NCBI GenBank assembly: GCA_000320545.1
Contig: ADNK01000008.1
Coordinates: 1 to 64,000 of the forward strand
Direction: 5' to 3'
DNA from: Bigelowiella natans CCMP2755
Taxonomy: Eukaryota > Protista > Cercozoa
DNA: 64,000 bases
Part shown: piece by piece, positions 18,762-33,407 of the stretch
How the letters are laid out: every line of letters begins with the position of its first letter
How positions within the stretch are numbered: position 1 is the first letter of the stretch
Notes under the pieces: generated by a model
What the model was told of the DNA's origin: nothing
What the model saw: the letters and a program-made list of their open reading frames with translations, nothing else
Database searches by the model: none
Translations under genes and position numbers: made by a program

Positions 18762-20769
18762 ATGCTGCGCAACCACCAAGAGTATACGCTGGCGCACGTG
18801 CACGTAAGCGTCTGCGTTGACCAGCAGACCAAGGCCAAATTGCCCCAGCCGAAGACAAAGCGAGCAACTTTCTGCAACTCATGCTTTCTGTACTGCTCAC
18901 AGAAACATACATGCCCTCATTGTGCTCAAATTTATCGTCAAGGCGATAGAGACGGTTTTGATGGGGAAAAGTGGCTATCTTGCTCAAAATGCCTCCGCTT
19001 CGTACACGTAAACTGTGACAAAGCTGTAAACGGTCACGACTTGGCAGAACGGGAACACAGTATCATCAAATCCAAGACATCTGGGGAAACCATCTCATCC
19101 TATCTATGCCTTGACTGCACAGCCCACAAAGAGCAGAAGATGAACGTAGAAGAAGACCATACGAATGAGAACAAAGATTTCTTCACTTTCTCTTCGTTGA
19201 TGCTTCAGGCTGCTGCAAGGCAAGAGGAGGCTCAGTGTGATGCCGCCGTGAATCTTGCAAGTCTTTCTCAGAAGCAGAAAATTGTTGATAAGAAGAAGCA
19301 GCAACCTGCGTCAAGTTCAATCTCTCCACGCAAATGTGCACCGCAGCATCAGGTGAAGCTTCAAGAGGCCGTTAACGTCAACAAGCAAACAAAAGATCAC
19401 ACGTTGAAGTCAAAACAGCCGGTCTCCGTGAAACTCGCTCCCCTTACCGTTGGCCTTTCCATACGTTCTACCTCGCGTTCTCATGATTGTGGAGGTAACG
19501 GCGCAACACAAAATGGCACATCTGGGACCTCCGCGAAGGAGTCACGCTGGGTGCGTTGCAGTCTCCCCAGCTGTAGGAAGTGGCGAAGACTAGGGAATAA
19601 GACTCCGCTTGATAAGTTATCCTACCCTTGGCAGTGCAAATACAACCGTTGGGACCCTCAATACTCTAGTTGCAGTTCTGCAGAGGAGGCACTTCTGTAC
19701 GATGAGACTGTTCTTTTAACGCACGAGAACACCCAGCAGTATGCCGCAGAGAAAAAGCGATTCTATGCTTCGTTGTCCTCGTTCAATCGCCAGATTGGTC
19801 GTCACATCTCTCGAAATCCTACTCTTGGCGGCAAGGACTTAGACCTGTATCGGCTGTATAAGGAAGTATCTGTACGCGGTGGATTCGAGCGCGTGGTCGC
19901 CGTAGAGGGCACCTGGGCGCGTATCTTTCGCACCTTAGACAACTTCTCGTCGACAGTCACCGATGCCAGGTACGCAACCTTCAACGTTAACGAATGAAAA
20001 GCATTCGCGATGATTTTATGCAGTTATATTGAGCATCTCTCTTTGCTGCTTTGGAATTGTCTTGTTTTTAGCTATCGTCTTCGGAGGTACTACCAGGAAT
20101 TTCTGTTTGCCTACGAGCAACACTACTTCTTTGGCAAAGAGATCCCCGAAATCCTGAGCAGCATAGTTCTCCCACCCATGCGAAGGCGGATGCGGAGAGG
20201 TTACGCCAAAAATACTCCAGGTATAAAACGATTCCACTCAAATGAGCTTTCTCTCCTAACGTGATTTTTTGTGCTTTACTACAGCGATGAAGCGTAGTAG
20301 AGTTTCTAAAGACTTCACAGGGATAACAGCTAGCAGAGCACAGACCCCAATTAAGGGTCTGAACGCTGCTGCTGCTGCTGCAGCTGCGGCTGCGGCTACT
20401 GTTGTTCCAGACGCCGCCGCAGTCAAAGGGACTCCACCGAAGAAGCTGAAGCAACAAATGAAGCAGTCAATTTCAGGAGTATTTGGACGATGCCCCAAAT
20501 TCCCACGACAAAGGAAGCGACCGCGTGCCTTTGTTAATAGTTCAGTGAAGCTGGTAGATAACAGAGAGTACAAGCTGTACCATAGTAAGAGGAAGATACG
20601 CCGTACACCTTCACCAATAAGCGATTTCGAGGAATATAGAAACGGTAGCGGATCTCCCACACACTGCTCGACTCAAAATGAAAATTCTTCGTTACCTTCA
20701 TCTTTATGGGAGAGATTCGCAGCATCTGGTGAGCCAATTAGCCCGTCCACCGCATCGCCGCTTAATTAG
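18762..20769 (+). CDS. Chromatin protein with PHD finger, CW zinc finger and ARID domain; true start probably ~18400-18700
   Basis: CPHC..KWLSCSKCLRFVHVNC..YLCLDC (PHD); WVRCSLPSCRKWRRL..WQCKYNRWD..SCSSAEE (zf-CW); PTLGGKDLDLYRLYKEVSVRGGF..W..TDA|SYRLRRYYQEFLFAYE (ARID). Introns at ~19970-20071 and ~20221-20284. Confidence 0.87.
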
Positions 20770-25732: not shown

Positions 25733-26352
25733 CAATAATCAATGGGAATCAAGTTTTCGCAATAACTGTTCGTTGATTTAGTCGCGCTGCTAAATAGCTC
25801 AACAGCTAATGTGATCCAGGCGTTATTATTAGCACAGCTGGGAATTATTTGAGTTAATTCTTCATTATGCCAATGACGACGACGCATGTCGACCGATATA
25901 TAAGCATCTATGCAGATGTATACATCTACCACATTGTACAATAATTTTTGTCTTCTTTAATAATGCATTGGCTGTATGTTGCCTTGACGCCTTTACACAG
26001 CAGCTGAATAGATATCCTTGCTGCATGCAGTCATTCAGTTCTCATGAAACCAGAAATGCTCGCAATATTTTTTAAAATTTGCCAGTGCGCATGCATATGT
26101 GTACGTTGTTTTGCTCCACAGTATATGTATGTGTTCATCTCTATAATGAAGACTCAGCAGCTGCGGTGCACGGTATGTATCGTATACAACCCCCCACACC
26201 CTGCTGCTAGATGCACACAGCTAGAAATGTATTCGCATACAATCATCGAATATCTAGTATGTTCTGGAATCATGATAATCTAAATAAATGGCGCTTTAAG
26301 CGCTGAATCAGCGTTGTTGTGCTTGGTGCTATAGCCTCTGCGATGGTAATAT

Positions 26353-27644
26353 TTACCAATGTACTCTGCGCGCCTTCCGTCCCATACCCAAACTCCCGCC
26401 CCTGCGTGGAACACACGAGAATGTAACCCATCAGAGTTAGATCAAGAGCATTATTGACTCATCGCGCGTGGTCGAAACCGGCAATTTAAGCACGGTTTCT
26501 CACGGACGTTTTTCTCGAGGAAGAGAAACATAAATTGTGCTTTGTATTCGGACGCATATCGACATTTCGTACCAGCTCTGAGCTTGCCTCAAGTTTTGCC
26601 GTGTCTTGGTGATCCCAACTTGCTGTCTTGACACGAAGATAGCCGTCCCTAGGCCCAGAATGAGGATGTGGTACATCTGTGAAACCACCAAATGCAGCGC
26701 AACGACGATCCTACCGATCATCAACCGCGGAGTGATATCTCCAAACCTGAGAGTAATGACACCGCAAAGGTATTTATGTCGCGCAAGAAGAGAGTAGGGA
26801 GAAAAAGAAGAGGCCTATCCACAGGGTGGCTGTTGTCGATGATTCTCCGTCCCTCATTTGAGTGACCGAAAACATCGACAATATTTGTTCTGGAACACGT
26901 ATTGAACTTGGTGGCCGTGCACCGGACAAGTACGCTCCATTAACGATGGGATGTTTTCAAATTTAAAAGTAATGATCATCATCTCAGAAGATCGCGGAAG
27001 ATTGTTTCCACGACAAGACATCATGCGGTGGATCTTACTCAACCCCCCAGGAGGAGATGATCTCAAGGGCGGTGAGAGAATGTACGAATGTTCGCCTCAA
27101 CGCTTTCCCGCCAGATCTATCCCTATCACACCTCCTCGACGACTTTTCGAGTACTAGTGAATAGAAACTTACCCCGTCGTGGTCATCGCAGTGAAGGAGA
27201 AGTAAAGCAGCTTCCACATTGCTGCAGTGATTGTCAAATCATCGAGCTGCTCGACGAAAGGGATTTTGAATGCGTCCTAACGAAGATGAAAATGATGATG
27301 ATGGTACTGGTGGTGGCGTCTTCCCTCCCCCCCCCCCTCCCCCCCCCTCTTCCTCTTCCTTATCATCATTGCCACTATCGCCCTGCAGCTTATGGTGCTT
27401 TCTTTACATCGAAACTTCGTTCTCATTCTTCCACCCCCCCACATCTATAATTCACTCACACTCTCTTCTTTCTCAGCGAGGGAGAGAGGGGGGTCTACTA
27501 CATGCGGAAGGCAACTACTACTTTATCAATGAGGAAAACCAACAAATAGACTCCGTCGAAAAGGACGATAATGGACAAGTAGCTTTGCACCAGGAATGAC
27601 AACCCAATCTCAACGTGATCGTGCATCTATTTTTACATTATTTA

Positions 27645-27675
<31 letters not shown>

Positions 27676-27745
27676 CATCGTTGCATAGCATTCTGTGGAT
27701 TATGTGGGTACATGCTAATGGCTGTGGTATCATCAAGCATCATTT

Positions 27746-27784
<39 letters not shown>

Positions 27785-27898
27785 CGATCAGAAGTCACTA
27801 CAGCGAAGCGCTGATGAGGGTATTCCCATAAAATGTATGAATGCTCTTTGGTGAATGTATTGCAGAGGATCGGAAAGAAAGTTAGCGATCATACGTAC

Positions 27899-27934
<36 letters not shown>

Positions 27935-28442
27935 CTTGAACGCGATTCGAAGGCTAACGGACAGTAGCAGCATCAGCAAGAACCCCTTGAAAATAGCAGT
28001 GTTGTCTTAGCATTGATATGATGAGAGAGACTCGCCATGCGCAATCTGCCCCTTTCCATTTGACGACGGAATAACACAGCACTCAACCAATGATGAGTGC
28101 AGTGCTGGCTGCAAGCTACTACGACGGACAGCAGCTGCGACAGCACGGTAGGTGCAAGGGAACATGCTACAAATACCCACTTACTTGTAGTATGCAGAGT
28201 GCCATAAACGCCGGTTTTGTAGCGACATAGGGCTGATGATGATGATGATGACGACGATGACAAAAGAGGTTGCAGGGGGAAGAAAATAGGAGGCAGTCAA
28301 TACGTGCGGTGTCTAAATGTAAATATTATGTTTAATATGTTATGTGATCCCCCTTCTCGCTGCAGCATCATCATCATCATCATCATCATCATCGTCACCA
28401 CCATCCCAATTAGCATATTTGTTGTATCGCGCGGTGCTACTA

Positions 28443-28474
<32 letters not shown>

Positions 28475-29192
28475 ATTTGTGTTACTCACATCCTTGATGA
28501 GTGTGGGGTCCAACACCTCGATCAAGCACAGAGTCCCCACCTGAATACCGATCACTACCAGGAGCAAGTAGGTGATGACGAATTTTCGCATCATCTCCAC
28601 CCCGGGAACGTGGTGTCGGATCCAAGAAACCACGCGCCTACGTGTGGTTTGTATGTGTGAGTATGCGTGGTATGACGACGATTCAAAGAGAGCAGCAGCA
28701 GGAGGAGGAGGAGGAGGAGGGGGGGGGGAAGAGAATAACTTCACGACCGAATCGATTAAACTTAGGATCCATATGTTTCTAGTGTTCATGCTTCCTGTAC
28801 TTTTCATGTCAAGGGGGCGGGGGAGGGGGGGGGGGCTTATGTTATGACACGGTGCTACAAGAGGCAGCTTGTTATAGCTCCTCTTCTCCTGCTACCTGAA
28901 GAAGCCCATCTCGTAGTGATCTCGAAACTGAGAGACGACGTCTTCCCCCACCTGTCAGATGGAGAATGATGATGATGATGATGATGGTGATGATGATGGT
29001 GATGATCATGATGATCATAACAACGACACACCTGCGTCTGGAAGTAGTGCAAAGCCCAGCCGAAAATGACTACGGAGAATATCACTCCTGATAGACAGAA
29101 AGGTTGTAGGACGTACGACAAGGAATCATCGGAGTATTGAGAGTTGGCTTGCAATGGACAGGAGCTAGATTCATCCATGGCGACGCATATTT

Positions 29193-29255
<63 letters not shown>

Positions 29256-30175
29256 AATTATATATGTGTTTGTGTGTGTCTGTGTGTGCAATATGCGTGT
29301 GTCAGCACCGACCTATGAGCATCTCAAGACAGCATAACATTTGGGCAGGTATTCCTCTGCAAATCACGTCCCCAAACCCAGCAGAGCTAAGGATGGTGAT
29401 GGATCATACATCATCTATCTCTCACTTCTCGAATATGGCGAGACGACAACAGCATAGAGCAAGAGGATCGAGTTCATCATCATCTCGACGATAGCGCAGA
29501 TGATATGCATCGTCCTGCTATACGTGTCTTTGCAGGAAGGCGGCTATCACCAGCATGCAACGTATCTTAAATAAAGAGCTACTCTACTCGATGATTGATG
29601 ATGGTGCTGATGGTGATGACGCAGGAGAGTGTAAGTAAGAAAGCGTGTGATGATGATGACAAAATGCTGCTGGCCCTACGTCAGAACGCTGAGAGAAAAG
29701 TATACAAAGCCGACGAGGACCCCGGGAACGTGTCCTTCCTGAGCAGTTGAGCAAATTTAAGAAACAGAACGGGGGAGGAGGAGTGATGACAGGATGGCGA
29801 AGTAGGAGGTTAACGGGCATGTAACATCGTCAATAATGGAAGCTGCGATGCCTCGTGCCTCCCCCCCTCCCTCCCCCTTTTCCTCCTCCTTCTTTTTCTT
29901 CTTCTTCTTCTTCTCTTTTAACAATAGAAGCACGATAAAATTCATATTATTCACCATTTGATGGAGAGTCAAAGCCTTCTTTCTCGAATTGTGGTCCTCT
30001 CCCACCCAACCCTGTCGAGATACGACGACGCACCATAGGTGGTGTGTATGGAGAAAGATATGGAAGACGAAGAAGAAGAAGAAGAAAAAGGAGAAGAAGG
30101 AAGAGAAGGAAAAGAAGCAGCAGCAGCGGCAACCAATCGACCCCGACATTAGTAGAATCATAGCAAAAAGCAGAA

Positions 30176-30206
<31 letters not shown>

Positions 30207-30601
30207 TACATCAACACGAAAGGCAGCAGGGTCCGAGATGAAGATGGCGAGATATAGGAAGGAAAACCCCAACGCGAAGGCTAACCAGCCATTGACCAGT
30301 CGAGAAATCGATATCGGATTCCATTTAGTGATCTAATCACGAGGAGGAGGAGGAACATAATTGTCACTTCAAGATGTTTCTTTTCCACATCTTTCATGCA
30401 AAAGGCATTCGCCGATCGGATATCATTAAATTGTGCACACACGTCGAGGATAAGCGTCCAGCCCGAGTAAAGGATTAAGTAGCCCTGAGAAGGGCAAGCA
30501 GGGAGGGGGGAGGACAATTCGGGTGATGATGATGATGATAATGATGATGATGATACCACATTGAGTAGTTTTGGTAAGCTCTTCCTGCAACAACAGTGGT
30601 G

Positions 30602-30660
<59 letters not shown>

Positions 30661-30866
30661 TACTTGAGCTGCCACTAATAGGGTCGTGCAGAATGTACTT
30701 TTCCAGCCCTACCTCGCCAACAACAACAACATTATTTTAAGGTAACAATTAGCGCAATAACACCGTCATCGTCCCGCATCACCATCTTATTCGCATCGGT
30801 CGTGTACACAAATTTGAAGAAAATGGCGTGCGGAATGGGTGCAAGAATACTTGGTAGATCTTGCTC

Positions 30867-30901
<35 letters not shown>

Positions 30902-31861
30902 CTTTTTAAAACAACGGGAGAATGAAAACACCGAACCATGTGGACATTGCTCGTCTCGAATATCTCGGGGTCGAATGTTTGCAGCACGATGTACTCAGCC
31001 ACTAATAAGACTAGACTCCAAAACGCGCTGGTGTTCCCCAAGAATCGAAGGACCGTATCTCGACATGACCTATGAACAACGAGGAGTTTCAACAATCGAT
31101 AAGCATCGTGGTAGCCAGCTGGTTCGTACAACAACAAGTTTAGGACCAACTAAACACGTGCACAACAGCAGCAGTTTCAATATACGATGATGATGTTTTC
31201 GAGGGCGGAGAGCACGGATGGCCCTGGTATATGCACATGCAGGCACATGTCCCCTCTGCTTTCGTGTTTATGTGTAAGCTTATGTTTCGGAATCTGTAGC
31301 TAATTCATGACCACAGGATTCATGATGCAGCATCATACCCGTCGGTGTTCTTGTATTCAAACCGATCTTCCCCGTCGTAGTCTGCCTCTTTCGAGAGCTA
31401 AATCAAACAAAATCATAAACCAAAAGTCAGCGGAAGGTTCTCCAAAGAAGAGCAAAATTGAGCTTAGCGAGTTGGCCGCACATCATCGAACTCTGTAATC
31501 CGAACGTCCTAAATTCGAATAAAGCAAATTATGAGAAAGAGAAAGGCACCGGACAAGTATTGTGTTGCTGTGTGAGATGAATTTCGTGGTCCGTAACAAA
31601 CATCATATGTAGAGTAGCCGGGACGATTTATTCCATGGTCCGCTCCCGTTACGTGCATTTGGCCGCGTCCTCCTCCTCCCTATATCCCGGAAGCAAGATA
31701 CTACAATGGGGAGCTGCTACGTAGTAGTGTCTTTTCGTCGGTAGCCATGCAAGAGAAATAGGCAGCGCGTGTGCTGTGTTTTTAAGACTTTGTGTGGTAC
31801 GCTTTTTTAATTCATTAATTAATTTCATGGAAAACGGGTTGCTTATTTCTTCCTGTTCCAT
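26353..31861 (-). CDS. Potassium channel-like protein with two pore domains in two internally repeated multi-TM modules; 5' end uncertain (up to ~32250)
   Basis: Pore 1: GFVYFSLSVLT|SAGFGDVICRG..LEMLIG (29738-29680 joined to 29386). Pore 2: LLYFSFTAMTTTG|FGDITPRLMIGRIVV (27276-27173 joined to 26746). The pre-pore helices are repeated: FSFLYLAIFISDPAAF vs FDGVYLLVFLIDKDAF. Confidence 0.85.
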
Positions 31862-32291
31862 TGTCGCTCTATAAAAACGCCATGTTTCGGAATGATCAAA
31901 GCGAAAGGGCGAAACACAGGAGATTCGTGTCGAAATTCCGTTATTACCGGGCATTCGACTCCTCATCACCGGGACGAGCCGCCCCCACCGTTTCGGATCG
32001 GTGTAACCTCCACACCAACCCACTCCCAAGCTGCTCAGAGATCTGGACGTTGAGAGCAAAGAAAGAGAGAGGGAGAAGGAGAGAGTCGTAGAGAGAGAAA
32101 AGACCCGCTCCGCCCTCCCTGGCCCAGTACTGCGCGTGATCGATCTTCCCCCTACTTGAAACCGGGTGAGAGCCACCACCCAGCCCTCACTGAATAGATT
32201 TACACAGGTGTTAATGTGTAATCCTTACACTGATACGACTGATCATTTTGTCGCAGCAGCTGAATTTGAGGGGGAGCACCGTCCGTAAAAG

Positions 32292-33407
32292 ATGATCCCT
32301 ACATTCCAGATCTCGCTCGACTCACCAATCATGCATGGATTGGTAAGAATTCATCCATCACATGTTCTTCTGTTTACTTCTCCCCTCACAACGGGGTTAC
32401 TTACTTACTTACTTACTTACTGACAACCTGTGTCAGGTGACCATCGGCAAGTTCGATGGAAAGCATCCTTCACTGGCGTGTGCTACAGGGGCAGCCAACA
32501 TACTAATCCACAGCCCCCATTTGCGCCATTCTGACGAGAATGTGAGCACAATTTCGAAATATTGCCATGAAAGCATATGTCTTAGCATGGATCTTATTCC
32601 GTTCGTTTCGAGCGCTAACTTTGAGCTTCTCGACCCATCAGCAAGAGGTGCGGCAATTGGATGTCAACCGCCGCATTTCTGCCCTTACCTCGGGAGAATG
32701 GCCTCTTCCGACGATCACGTTTGACTCTGAGGCTTCGAGTGAAAAAATGAAGTCTCTCAGCGTTGATGCGATAGAACAGATGCAATCCAAGGTGAGAAAT
32801 GTGCGGTGTTCGGTATCATGATCACTGAGAGGAACGTGTGCGGCCAAGACAGGCAGATGATCAACGTCGAATCAAATGCCATGATGAACCCTAATGCTTC
32901 TTGCTTTGTACATACCATTTCTATATAATATATAAATACATATATATTATCACGCTCCATTATGCTGATATGTCATTATCTATTGCGTGTATTGCTGCGA
33001 AAAGAGTGATGAACCATTAAGGCGTACTGGACGACAAGTGAAGGAAAAGACTCGGTATGGATATATTTCACTATGAAAGAGCCGGCTTCGAATCTCACCA
33101 CCAATACACTTACCGACGATGATGATTCAATTGAGAAACAACATATTTCTATCGTGTCCCAGGCGCCACGCACTGCTAGTGGGGACTCAAGCAAACCTGC
33201 TGTGCTACGACGTGGAAGAGAACTCTGATCTCTTCTACAAAGACTGCCCTGAGGGGCTGAATACGATTGCATTTGGGACGATCCCTGGAATGAAAGAGCC
33301 GCTCACCATCGTAGGGTGAGAAGAGAAATAGAACTACTTTCTGCTGTAAGCTTTGTTGACTAACCCCCCTCCATTTATTCAAGATGTACCACGTATACAC
33401 ACAAAAA

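What the first reader, a model, noticed from the sequence alone, without database searches (positions are those of the whole stretch)
26353..31861. Two-repeat K+ channel built from a duplicated multi-TM + pore module, with asymmetric filters
Seen: two pore domains, each preceded by several TM helices that align between the halves (LQTFDPEIF ~ IEVLDPTLI; LYLAIFISDPAAF ~ VYLLVFLIDKDAF). Filter 1 is T-S-A-G-F-G-D; filter 2 is T-T-T-G-F-G-D. Established: K2P channels have 4 TM and 2 pores, and fungal TOK has extra TMs only before pore 1. The Y-x-L-x(3)-D-P-x-A-F..YFS..T-T-x-G-x-G-D-I-x-P pattern recalls prokaryotic Ion_trans_2 channels. Inference: an internal duplication of a bacterial-type channel giving a topology distinct from K2P and TOK, functioning as a dimer with possibly altered selectivity.
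Basis: partly seen in the sequence, partly recalled or inferred. Interest (0 to 1): 0.75.

Follow-up and report, generated by a model that had tools for sequence, protein, structure and literature searches.

The report
Tandem two-pore potassium channel gene
This alga (Bigelowiella natans) has a many-exon gene that most likely makes a potassium-channel protein from two copies of a four-helix, one-pore unit joined head to tail, a layout not among the described two-pore channels, but no RNA evidence could be obtained here that the two halves form one message.

Summary
It holds two K+-channel pore loops, ..YFSLSVL-TSAGFGD and ..YFSFTAM-TTTGFGD. Each pore loop is preceded by three hydrophobic helices and followed by one, so the layout is (TM1-TM2-M1-P-M2) x 2, 8TM/2P.

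The two pore modules are clearly related: 29% identity over 84 residues, z about 16 against shuffles, and reciprocal best among ten pore modules of this genome. There the support is matching phase-0 introns.

A collinear paralogue lies on another contig. Nothing related was found elsewhere, but only single exons could be searched.

The layout differs from K2P (4TM), TOK (S1-S4 before two 2TM pores) and the 12TM kinds, of which this genome also has two. A bacterial origin was not tested.

Verdict: a likely real, probably unannotated gene, and a new variant of the tandem-pore K+ channel kind. The scan holds no earlier follow-up of this stretch.

The parts
31724..31861 (-). Unverified.
   Evidence: Open frame and a GT donor in phase 0 seen; no Pfam match; no RNA or homology support.
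30946..31149 (-). Exon A: cytoplasmic stretch plus TM1 (31029-30973), ends ..LQTFDPEIFETSN.
   Evidence: Best of three frames by codon usage. A weak A-like copy at G000:C285 (E 0.0037). No relative among 1.84 billion representatives.
30664..30708 (-). Exon A2 (GWKSTFCTTLLVAAQ): first half of TM2.
   Evidence: Chosen partly because it mirrors exon D2 (..Q|G.. junction, phase 0), so it is the least secure exon.
30443..30484 (-). Exon A3 (GYLILYSGWTLILD): second half of TM2.
   Evidence: The paralogue has LLFSGW at the collinear place upstream of its pore 1.
30210..30332 (-). Exon B: TM2-M1 loop and outer helix M1 (30290-30234), ends ..ISDPAAFRVD.
   Evidence: Aligns with exon E at z=7.3.
29680..29738 (-). 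Exon P1: pore helix 1 (EGHVPGVLVGFVYFSLSVL plus 2 nt of the T codon).
29313..29386 (-). Exon C: filter 1 (T)SAGFGD (29385-29368) and the start of inner helix M2.
   Evidence: Pfam Ion_trans_2 E=0.0011, 19.2 bits, below the 22.5 cut-off. 35% identical to the paralogue's pore-1 exon, which passes the cut-off at 29.7 bits.
29032..29087 (-). Exon S6a: rest of inner helix M2 (GVIFSVVIFGWALHYFQTQ).
   Evidence: The paralogue has a matching exon ..VGFFVICLHQFRE.
28896..28951 (-). Linker exon LK (VGEDVVSQFRDHYEMGFF plus 2 nt). It joins half 1 to half 2 in frame. If its donor is not used, a TAG stop follows at once (28893-28891).
   Evidence: Highest per-codon coding score of all exons. Its first residues continue the ..Q-Q-V-G match with the stretch after the inner helix of half 2.
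28490..28637 (-). Exon D: cytoplasmic stretch plus TM1' (28567-28511), ends ..IEVLDPTLIKD.
   Evidence: The paralogue's D-like exon is 46% identical over 26 aa. It has the same ACGTAG|N acceptor in the same phase, no Met, and stops just upstream.
28185..28232 (-). Exon D2 (PYVATKPAFMALCILQ): first half of TM2'.
   Evidence: among the 18 single-exon, frame-keeping joins between D and D3 it is the only one with a gtaag-type donor (GTAAGT).
27935..27985 (-). Exon D3 (GFLLMLLLSVSLRIAFK): second half of TM2'.
   Evidence: The paralogue has ..VLMMFMILLTSTRL at the collinear place.
27522..27626 (-). Exon E: outer helix M1' (27584-27528), ends ..VYLLVFLIDK.
   Evidence: 47% identical to the paralogue exon, which ends ..LINK|gt at the same place.
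27173..27276 (-). Exon F: turret and pore helix 2 (DAFKIPF..LLYFSFTAMTTT plus 2 nt of the G codon).
   Evidence: The paralogue has LLYFSISVQVT downstream of its E-like exon.
26573..26746 (-). Exon G: (G)FGDITP, inner helix M2' (26709-26653) and a basic tail.
   Evidence: The Atlas feature search gives Ion_trans_2 clusters (0.91, 185 of 256 shared features).
26353..26401 (-). Doubtful.
   Evidence: Negative coding score. Alternative: exon G runs on unspliced to a stop whose last base is 26500.

Best explanation
One nuclear gene of Bigelowiella natans, on the minus strand with at least 15 short exons, encodes a protein of about 445-490 residues. The protein consists of two homologous repeats, each with two peripheral helices (TM1, TM2), an outer helix, a pore helix with a K+ signature, and an inner helix. 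With an N-terminus inside, the helix order puts both pore loops outside; the loop charges fit this only in part. By analogy with K2P and TOK channels, two such subunits would form a pore with four pore loops, two TSAGFGD and two TTTGFGD. The result would be a K+-preferring leak-type channel without any recognisable regulatory domain. The repeat arose by internal duplication before this gene and its paralogue on contig C3716 separated. Shown: the exons, the open frame, the two signatures, the eight hydrophobic peaks, the similarity of the two pore modules, and the collinear paralogue. Inferred: one transcript, the dimer, K+ selectivity, and the role of TM1-TM2.
For: All 15 exons have AG/GT borders and join in frame without a stop. 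11 of the 15 score best in the predicted frame by codon usage. There are eight TM peaks plus pore helices. K+R minus D+E is positive for four of the five predicted inner stretches and negative for three of the four outer ones; the exceptions are the TM2'-M1' and TM1'-TM2' loops. The pore modules are 29% identical over 84 aa, z about 16, and are reciprocal best among ten modules of this genome (105 against 82 and 88). Three phase-0 introns (A|A2, A2|A3, A3|B) are mirrored by D|D2, D2|D3 and D3|E, with exons of 15/16 and 14/17 codons. For one transcript: the linker exon keeps the frame. Exon D has an acceptor, and the paralogue keeps that acceptor in the same phase in an exon with no Met and with stops just upstream. 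The possible stop of a half-1 gene and the possible starts of a half-2 gene lie only 84-450 nt apart. Twenty run assemblies of about 40 Mb each, from 7 studies, hold 0.21-0.34 of the locus's words. That is roughly 1.2-1.9 kb, about the size of the whole spliced message.
Against: There is no read-level RNA evidence, so every junction is a prediction. Exon A2 was picked partly for its symmetry with D2. The TM1 and TM2 exons of the two halves are not similar beyond chance. Left unspliced, the linker exon ends in a stop right after ..GFFR, and an in-frame ATG at 28807 could start a separate half-2 protein. Filter 1 has S-A where canonical channels have T-V. No exon of this gene reaches Pfam's cut-off on its own. 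No start codon is established.
Confidence: 0.58

Rival explanations
1. Two neighbouring genes, each a 4TM/1P subunit (S1-S2-S3-P-S4), made by tandem gene duplication. Their products would assemble as tetramers or heterotetramers.
For: Read-through of the linker exon's donor gives an immediate TAG (28893-28891). An ATG at 28807 opens a frame that runs straight into exon D. 4TM/1P subunits are reported from three prokaryotes (PMC2234077).
Against: The gap between that stop and that ATG is 84 nt, which leaves no room for a 3' UTR, a promoter and a 5' UTR. The stretch from 28807 to exon D is proline-repeat low complexity. The paralogue's exon D has no Met, stops just upstream, and the same acceptor and phase, so it is an internal exon there. 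The same tight order pore 1, D-like, E-like is kept at the paralogous locus.
Confidence: 0.2
2. A member of an already described repeat-channel kind (the Paramecium-type 12TM/2P Kv-like tandem, or TPC) whose S3-S4 exons I missed.
For: The same genome has two Kv-like two-repeat genes: C534 and C1151, with Pfam Ion_trans 4e-40 and 4e-36 plus an upstream first repeat. The ends of TM1 (..LQTFDPEIF..IEVLDPTLI) recall the end of S1 in Kv channels (from memory, not tested).
Against: The introns between TM1 and the outer helix are only 110-308 nt and consist largely of microsatellites. They have no room for about 55 more codons plus extra introns. No similarity to the voltage-sensor parts of C534 or C1151 appeared in a local tblastx. 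No run of basic residues at every third position is seen. The pore-to-pore spacing is about 211 residues.
Confidence: 0.07
3. A decaying or silent locus: an unexpressed pseudogene, or an artefact of my exon choice in repeat-rich DNA.
For: No model containing exon A is in a protein library that does hold the JGI proteome of this alga. An A-like fragment with an in-frame TGA exists at C285. Filter 1 is non-canonical. The terminal exon H scores badly.
Against: A frame open across 15 exons and 1338 nt is hard to explain in a dead gene. The paralogue conserves protein sequence and intron places. About a third of the locus's words are present in small, transcriptome-sized assemblies from 7 studies.
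Confidence: 0.1

Closest known systems
K2P / KCNK and plant TPK two-pore-domain K+ channels (M1-P1-M2-M3-P2-M4)
   Same: Two pore loops with K+ signatures in one polypeptide. The two filters are unequal. A dimer with four pore loops is expected. There is no voltage-sensor S4.
   Different: Eight predicted helices, not four. Four helices lie between the two pore loops, not two. The M1-P1 loop of about 15 residues is too short for the extracellular cap of animal K2P. There are no EF hands or 14-3-3 site as in plant TPK. No sequence match could be tested at full length.
Fungal TOK1 (S1-S4, then S5-P1-S6-S7-P2-S8)
   Same: Eight helices and two pore loops per subunit, with extra non-sensor helices.
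   Different: In TOK all four extra helices precede pore 1. Here each pore has its own pair, and the two halves are repeats of one another. TOK is said to be confined to fungi (PMC2234077).
Paramecium-type 12TM/2P tandem Kv-like channels, and TPC (2 x 6TM)
   Same: Whole subunit repeated in tandem: extra helices plus a pore, twice.
   Different: Four helices per repeat, not six. No S4 and no Pfam Ion_trans match. TPC filters are not K+ signatures. This genome has true 2 x 6TM K+ genes at C534 and C1151, and they are not similar to this gene outside the filter.
Prokaryotic 4TM S1-S2-S3-P-S4 K+ channel subunits (two Actinobacteria, one alpha-proteobacterium; PMC2234077)
   Same: Each half has exactly this helix order.
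   Different: Those are single-repeat proteins. Relatedness was not tested here, because no sequences were in reach and single exons were too short.

Membership tests
K+ channel pore superfamily (Pfam Ion_trans_2, PF07885) | Pore helix followed by a T-x-G-[YFL]-G-D type signature between two helices | tested here: met
   ..YFSLSVL-TSAGFGD and ..YFSFTAM-TTTGFGD, each between hydrophobic peaks.
K+ channel pore superfamily (Pfam Ion_trans_2, PF07885) | Profile match above Pfam's gathering score | tested here: inconclusive
   Only single exons could be scanned. Exon C scored 19.2 bits against a cut-off of 22.5; exons A, D and G gave no match. The paralogue's unsplit pore-1 exon passes with 29.7 bits. 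The Atlas features of exon G point to PF07885 clusters.
K2P / TPK | Two pore loops per subunit | tested here: inconclusive
   Met by the spliced model, but the single transcript is not shown.
K2P / TPK | Four helices, with only M2 and M3 between the pores | tested here: not met
   Eight peaks, four of them between the filters; the filters lie 211 residues apart.
K2P (animal) | Long M1-P1 loop forming the extracellular cap | tested here: not met
   Residues 131-146 only between M1 and pore helix 1.
TOK | S1-S4 all before pore 1, then two 2TM pore units back to back | tested here: not met
   Two helices precede each pore unit, and the halves are repeats.
TPC / 12TM tandem Kv-like | Six helices per repeat with a charged S4; Pfam Ion_trans | tested here: not met
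   Four peaks per repeat; no Ion_trans match on any exon; the introns are too short to hide S3-S4. Subject to cDNA confirmation.
Prokaryotic 4TM/1P subunits | Sequence relatedness of a half to those proteins | not testable with these tools
   It needs the joined half as a query. Exon-level searches found nothing.

The most novel reading that the evidence does not exclude
A lineage-restricted class of tandem-pore K+ channel, S1-S2-S3-P1-S4-S5-S6-S7-P2-S8. It would have arisen by internal duplication of a 4TM/1P subunit, independently of K2P/TPK, TOK and the 12TM tandems, and is so far seen only as two paralogues in a chlorarachniophyte and is absent from its published gene catalogue. It would be a further, independent origin of the tandem architecture, whose origin is currently described as unknown (PMC13715775).
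Probability: 0.45. Interest if true: 0.65.

Novelty: new variant of a known kind. Interest (0 to 1): 0.5.

Why it matters
Tandem-pore K+ channels are known in three layouts: 4TM in animals, plants and algae, 8TM TOK in fungi, and 12TM in Paramecium (PMC2234077). A 2026 paper states that the origin of the tandem architecture is unknown and that bacteria lack it (PMC13715775). A fourth layout, built by duplicating a 4TM/1P unit, would show that whole-subunit duplication happened repeatedly and on different starting subunits. It would also give a natural test case for how two unequal filters (TSAGFG and TTTGFG) share one pore, and for what a two-helix appendage does next to each pore unit. It also flags a probable gap in the Bigelowiella gene catalogue.

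Tried and rejected
After that, no letters of 30081-30117 went to any database, pattern, genome, paper or findings search. Local scripts did read the whole window, including a local tblastx of 26000-32500 against loci of the same genome. Those places lie in the intron between exons B and P1.

I then used coordinates only.

3. The first P1 exon (29517-29426 with a 39-nt intron, giving filter ENSAGFGD) was rejected after I listed all frame-compatible donors.

4. An exon IYQVFLHPF..RIRW (30859-30783) looked conserved in the paralogue (10 aa). I dropped it for the shorter path that mirrors half 2. It remains a possible alternative.

5. Searches that found nothing: the big profile search with exon A (0 hits at E<=0.001); the word search with the 183-aa open stretch around exon D, which sees only proteins of 100-320 aa; metagenome loci with exon G; an alignment of exons E, B and the paralogue's E-like exon, too little conserved to scan with; PDB with exons F and G, where the intron splits the signature; Atlas with exon A.

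6. Codon-usage scanning for missed exons was too noisy in this microsatellite-rich DNA.

7. Getting the public gene model through a neighbour failed. The neighbouring ARID protein (P0001) has no contig on record, and the contigs of its relative are not syntenic.

8. The joined, spliced model was built only inside local scripts, from coordinates. It was used for the frame check, hydropathy, and pairwise comparison with pore modules of the same genome. It was handed to no search, family, structure or fold tool. Full-length Pfam, homologue search and structure prediction were therefore left out.
Full report
WHAT IS THERE. The window is eukaryotic DNA with about 45% G+C, short exons and introns full of microsatellites. 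A neighbouring ORF (18762-19994) is 99% identical to a protein that EukProt names jgi/Bigna1/66119. The genome is therefore Bigelowiella natans, as earlier notes of this scan suggested.

On the minus strand I read the region in three frames. I fixed 15 exons by coordinates: A 31149-30946, A2 30708-30664, A3 30484-30443, B 30332-30210, P1 29738-29680, C 29386-29313, S6a 29087-29032, LK 28951-28896, D 28637-28490, D2 28232-28185, D3 27985-27935, E 27626-27522, F 27276-27173, G 26746-26573 and H 26401-26353. All have AG and GT borders, the phases agree, and the join is open for 445 codons up to the TAA at 26353. The introns are 80-471 nt long.

THE OBSERVATION. Both signatures are real.
- Pore 2 reads ..LLYFSFTAMTTT(G)|FGDITP across a phase-2 intron.
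- Pore 1 reads ..FVYFSLSVL(T)|SAGFGDV. My first attempt used a different upstream exon and a 39-nt intron.
- A Kyte-Doolittle scan of the locally joined model gives peaks at residues 41-59, 78-96, 112-130, (pore helix 142-160), 174-192, 244-262, 277-295, 317-335 and 385-403. That is TM1-TM2-M1-P-M2 twice.
- With an N-terminus inside, the helix order puts both pore loops outside. The loop charges fit this only in part: K+R minus D+E is positive for four of the five predicted inner stretches and negative for three of the four outer ones; the TM2'-M1' and TM1'-TM2' loops are the exceptions.

IS THE REPEAT MORE THAN CHANCE?
- Exon by exon against shuffles: B vs E z=7.3, C vs G z=5.8, sum over all pairs z=6.0.
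- The complete pore modules align over 84 residues at 29% identity, score 105 against 28 +/- 4.9 for shuffles.
- Each module is the other's best match among eight further pore modules that I could cut from single open frames of this genome (next best 82 and 88).
- For TM1 and TM2 the support is structural. Three phase-0 introns fall at corresponding places, with exons of 15/16 and 14/17 codons and a ..Q|G.. junction in both halves. Exon A2 was chosen partly for that symmetry, so this argument is partly circular.

RELATIVES.
- In the alga's own genome PF07885 rings 47 times, but not in this window at E<=0.01, because introns cut the domain.
- Exon E finds one paralogue, C3716:1215-1304 (47% identity).
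- That locus (L002) is collinear on one strand. It has a pore-1 exon ..CLYFSTATMTGVGFGDVV.. (Pfam 29.7 bits), an S6a-like exon, a D-like exon (46% over 26 aa), a D3-like exon, an E-like exon ending ..LINK|gt exactly as ours ends ..LIDK|gt, and a pore-2 helix LLYFSISVQVT.
- The duplication therefore predates the two paralogues.
- Exon A has a weak copy with an in-frame TGA at C285.
- Outside this genome nothing was found with exon A in 1.84 billion representatives, with the exon-D stretch in the word search, with exon G in JGI metagenomes or in PDB.
- These searches were exon-sized, so they say little about distant relatives.
- The library does hold the JGI proteome of this alga, so the blank for the 68-codon exon A suggests the gene is missing from that catalogue.

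ONE GENE OR TWO? No reads could be laid.

For one gene:
- The linker exon keeps the frame between the inner helix of half 1 and exon D.
- Its first residues continue the ..Q-Q-V-G match with the stretch after the inner helix of half 2.
- Exon D begins at an ACGTAG|N acceptor in phase 2. The paralogue keeps the same acceptor and phase in an exon that has no Met and has stops directly upstream. Exon D is thus an internal exon there.
- Any stop for a half-1 protein (TAG 28893-28891, or a read-through stop whose last base is 28855) lies only 84-450 nt from any start for a half-2 protein (ATG 28807, or the two ATGs inside exon D).
- Twenty small assemblies (about 40 Mb each, 7 studies) hold 0.21-0.34 of the locus's words. 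That is about the size of the whole spliced message, not of half of it. The tool only guesses that these runs are RNA.

Against one gene:
- If the linker exon's donor is not used, it is followed at once by a stop.
- An upstream in-frame ATG exists in this gene.

I put one transcript at about 0.7. The complete best explanation, which also requires the 8TM layout and channel function, I put at 0.58.

COMPARISON WITH WHAT IS KNOWN. A survey from the Kung laboratory lists two-pore K+ channels with 4 TM (animals), 8 TM (fungal TOK, S1-S4 then S5-P1-S6-S7-P2-S8, 'not encountered outside the fungal kingdom') and 12 TM (Paramecium). It also lists single 4TM S1-S2-S3-P-S4 subunits in two Actinobacteria and one alpha-proteobacterium (PMC2234077). 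A 2026 paper on a viral K2P states that the origin of the tandem architecture is unknown and that bacteria lack it (PMC13715775).

The present model has the 4TM/1P helix order twice. It fails the helix-count tests for K2P, TOK, TPC and the 12TM kind (see the membership table). My paper searches for such a layout found none, but they were few and keyed on words. The 'bacterial-type' idea could not be tested. Its only support is an Atlas look-alike cluster for exon G, which is a lead and not evidence.

MECHANISM. By analogy with K2P and TOK, two subunits would give a pore lined by two TSAGFG and two TTTGFG loops. Ser keeps the hydroxyl of the first filter position, Ala replaces Val, and both loops keep G-F-G-D, so K+ preference is likely but may be weakened. 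No RCK, CNBD, EF-hand or S4 was seen in any exon, which suggests a background or lipid/pH-type gate. All of this paragraph is inference.

LIMITS. The spliced model was joined only in local scripts. No joined sequence went to any search, family or structure tool, so full-length Pfam, homologue search and folding were left out.

Noticed in passing
G000:C534 (L003:2014-4394, + strand) and G000:C1151 (L004:5833-2046, - strand): Two genes of the same genome encode Kv-like channels with two six-helix repeats. Each has a long ORF with a full S4 (RVLRLLRLLRLARLAK), a TVGYGD or TVGFGD filter and Pfam Ion_trans at 4e-40 / 4e-36, preceded on the same strand by a first Ion_trans repeat. This is the 12TM/2P layout that PMC2234077 mentions for Paramecium as unpublished data.
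   Followed up: partly
G000:C3716:1-9000 (L002), minus strand: This is the paralogue of the channel gene. The first 235 bases of the contig repeat bases 1235-1469 (the same peptides appear), so the 3' part of the paralogue may be mis-assembled. A further pore-helix-like stretch (..GYIYFSTSI..) lies upstream at 5376-5350.
   Followed up: partly
G000:C285:12268-12417 (L001:6269-6418, + strand): A copy of exon A (46-49% identity) with an in-frame TGA and no Ion_trans_2 match on that contig. It is perhaps a gene fragment or a pseudogene.
   Followed up: no
window 18762-19997, + strand: A PHD / zf-CW / ARID gene, which is JGI Bigna1 66119 (P0001, 677 aa). Relatives at 50-54% identity include one in Plasmodiophora brassicae (P0004). 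Another (P0003) lies on metagenome scaffolds whose neighbouring genes are called as long uninterrupted products (L020-L022; ENA and Logan), possibly an uncultured relative with few introns.
   Followed up: partly
window 30650-30590, 29260-29195, 28470-28370, 27960-27900 and others: Nearly every intron of the gene carries (CA)n, (TA)n, trinucleotide or homopolymer repeats, while the exons are free of them. Several such repeats give long false open frames, for example the 191-aa frame 30332-29760.
   Followed up: no
They were left out of all later searches.
   Followed up: no
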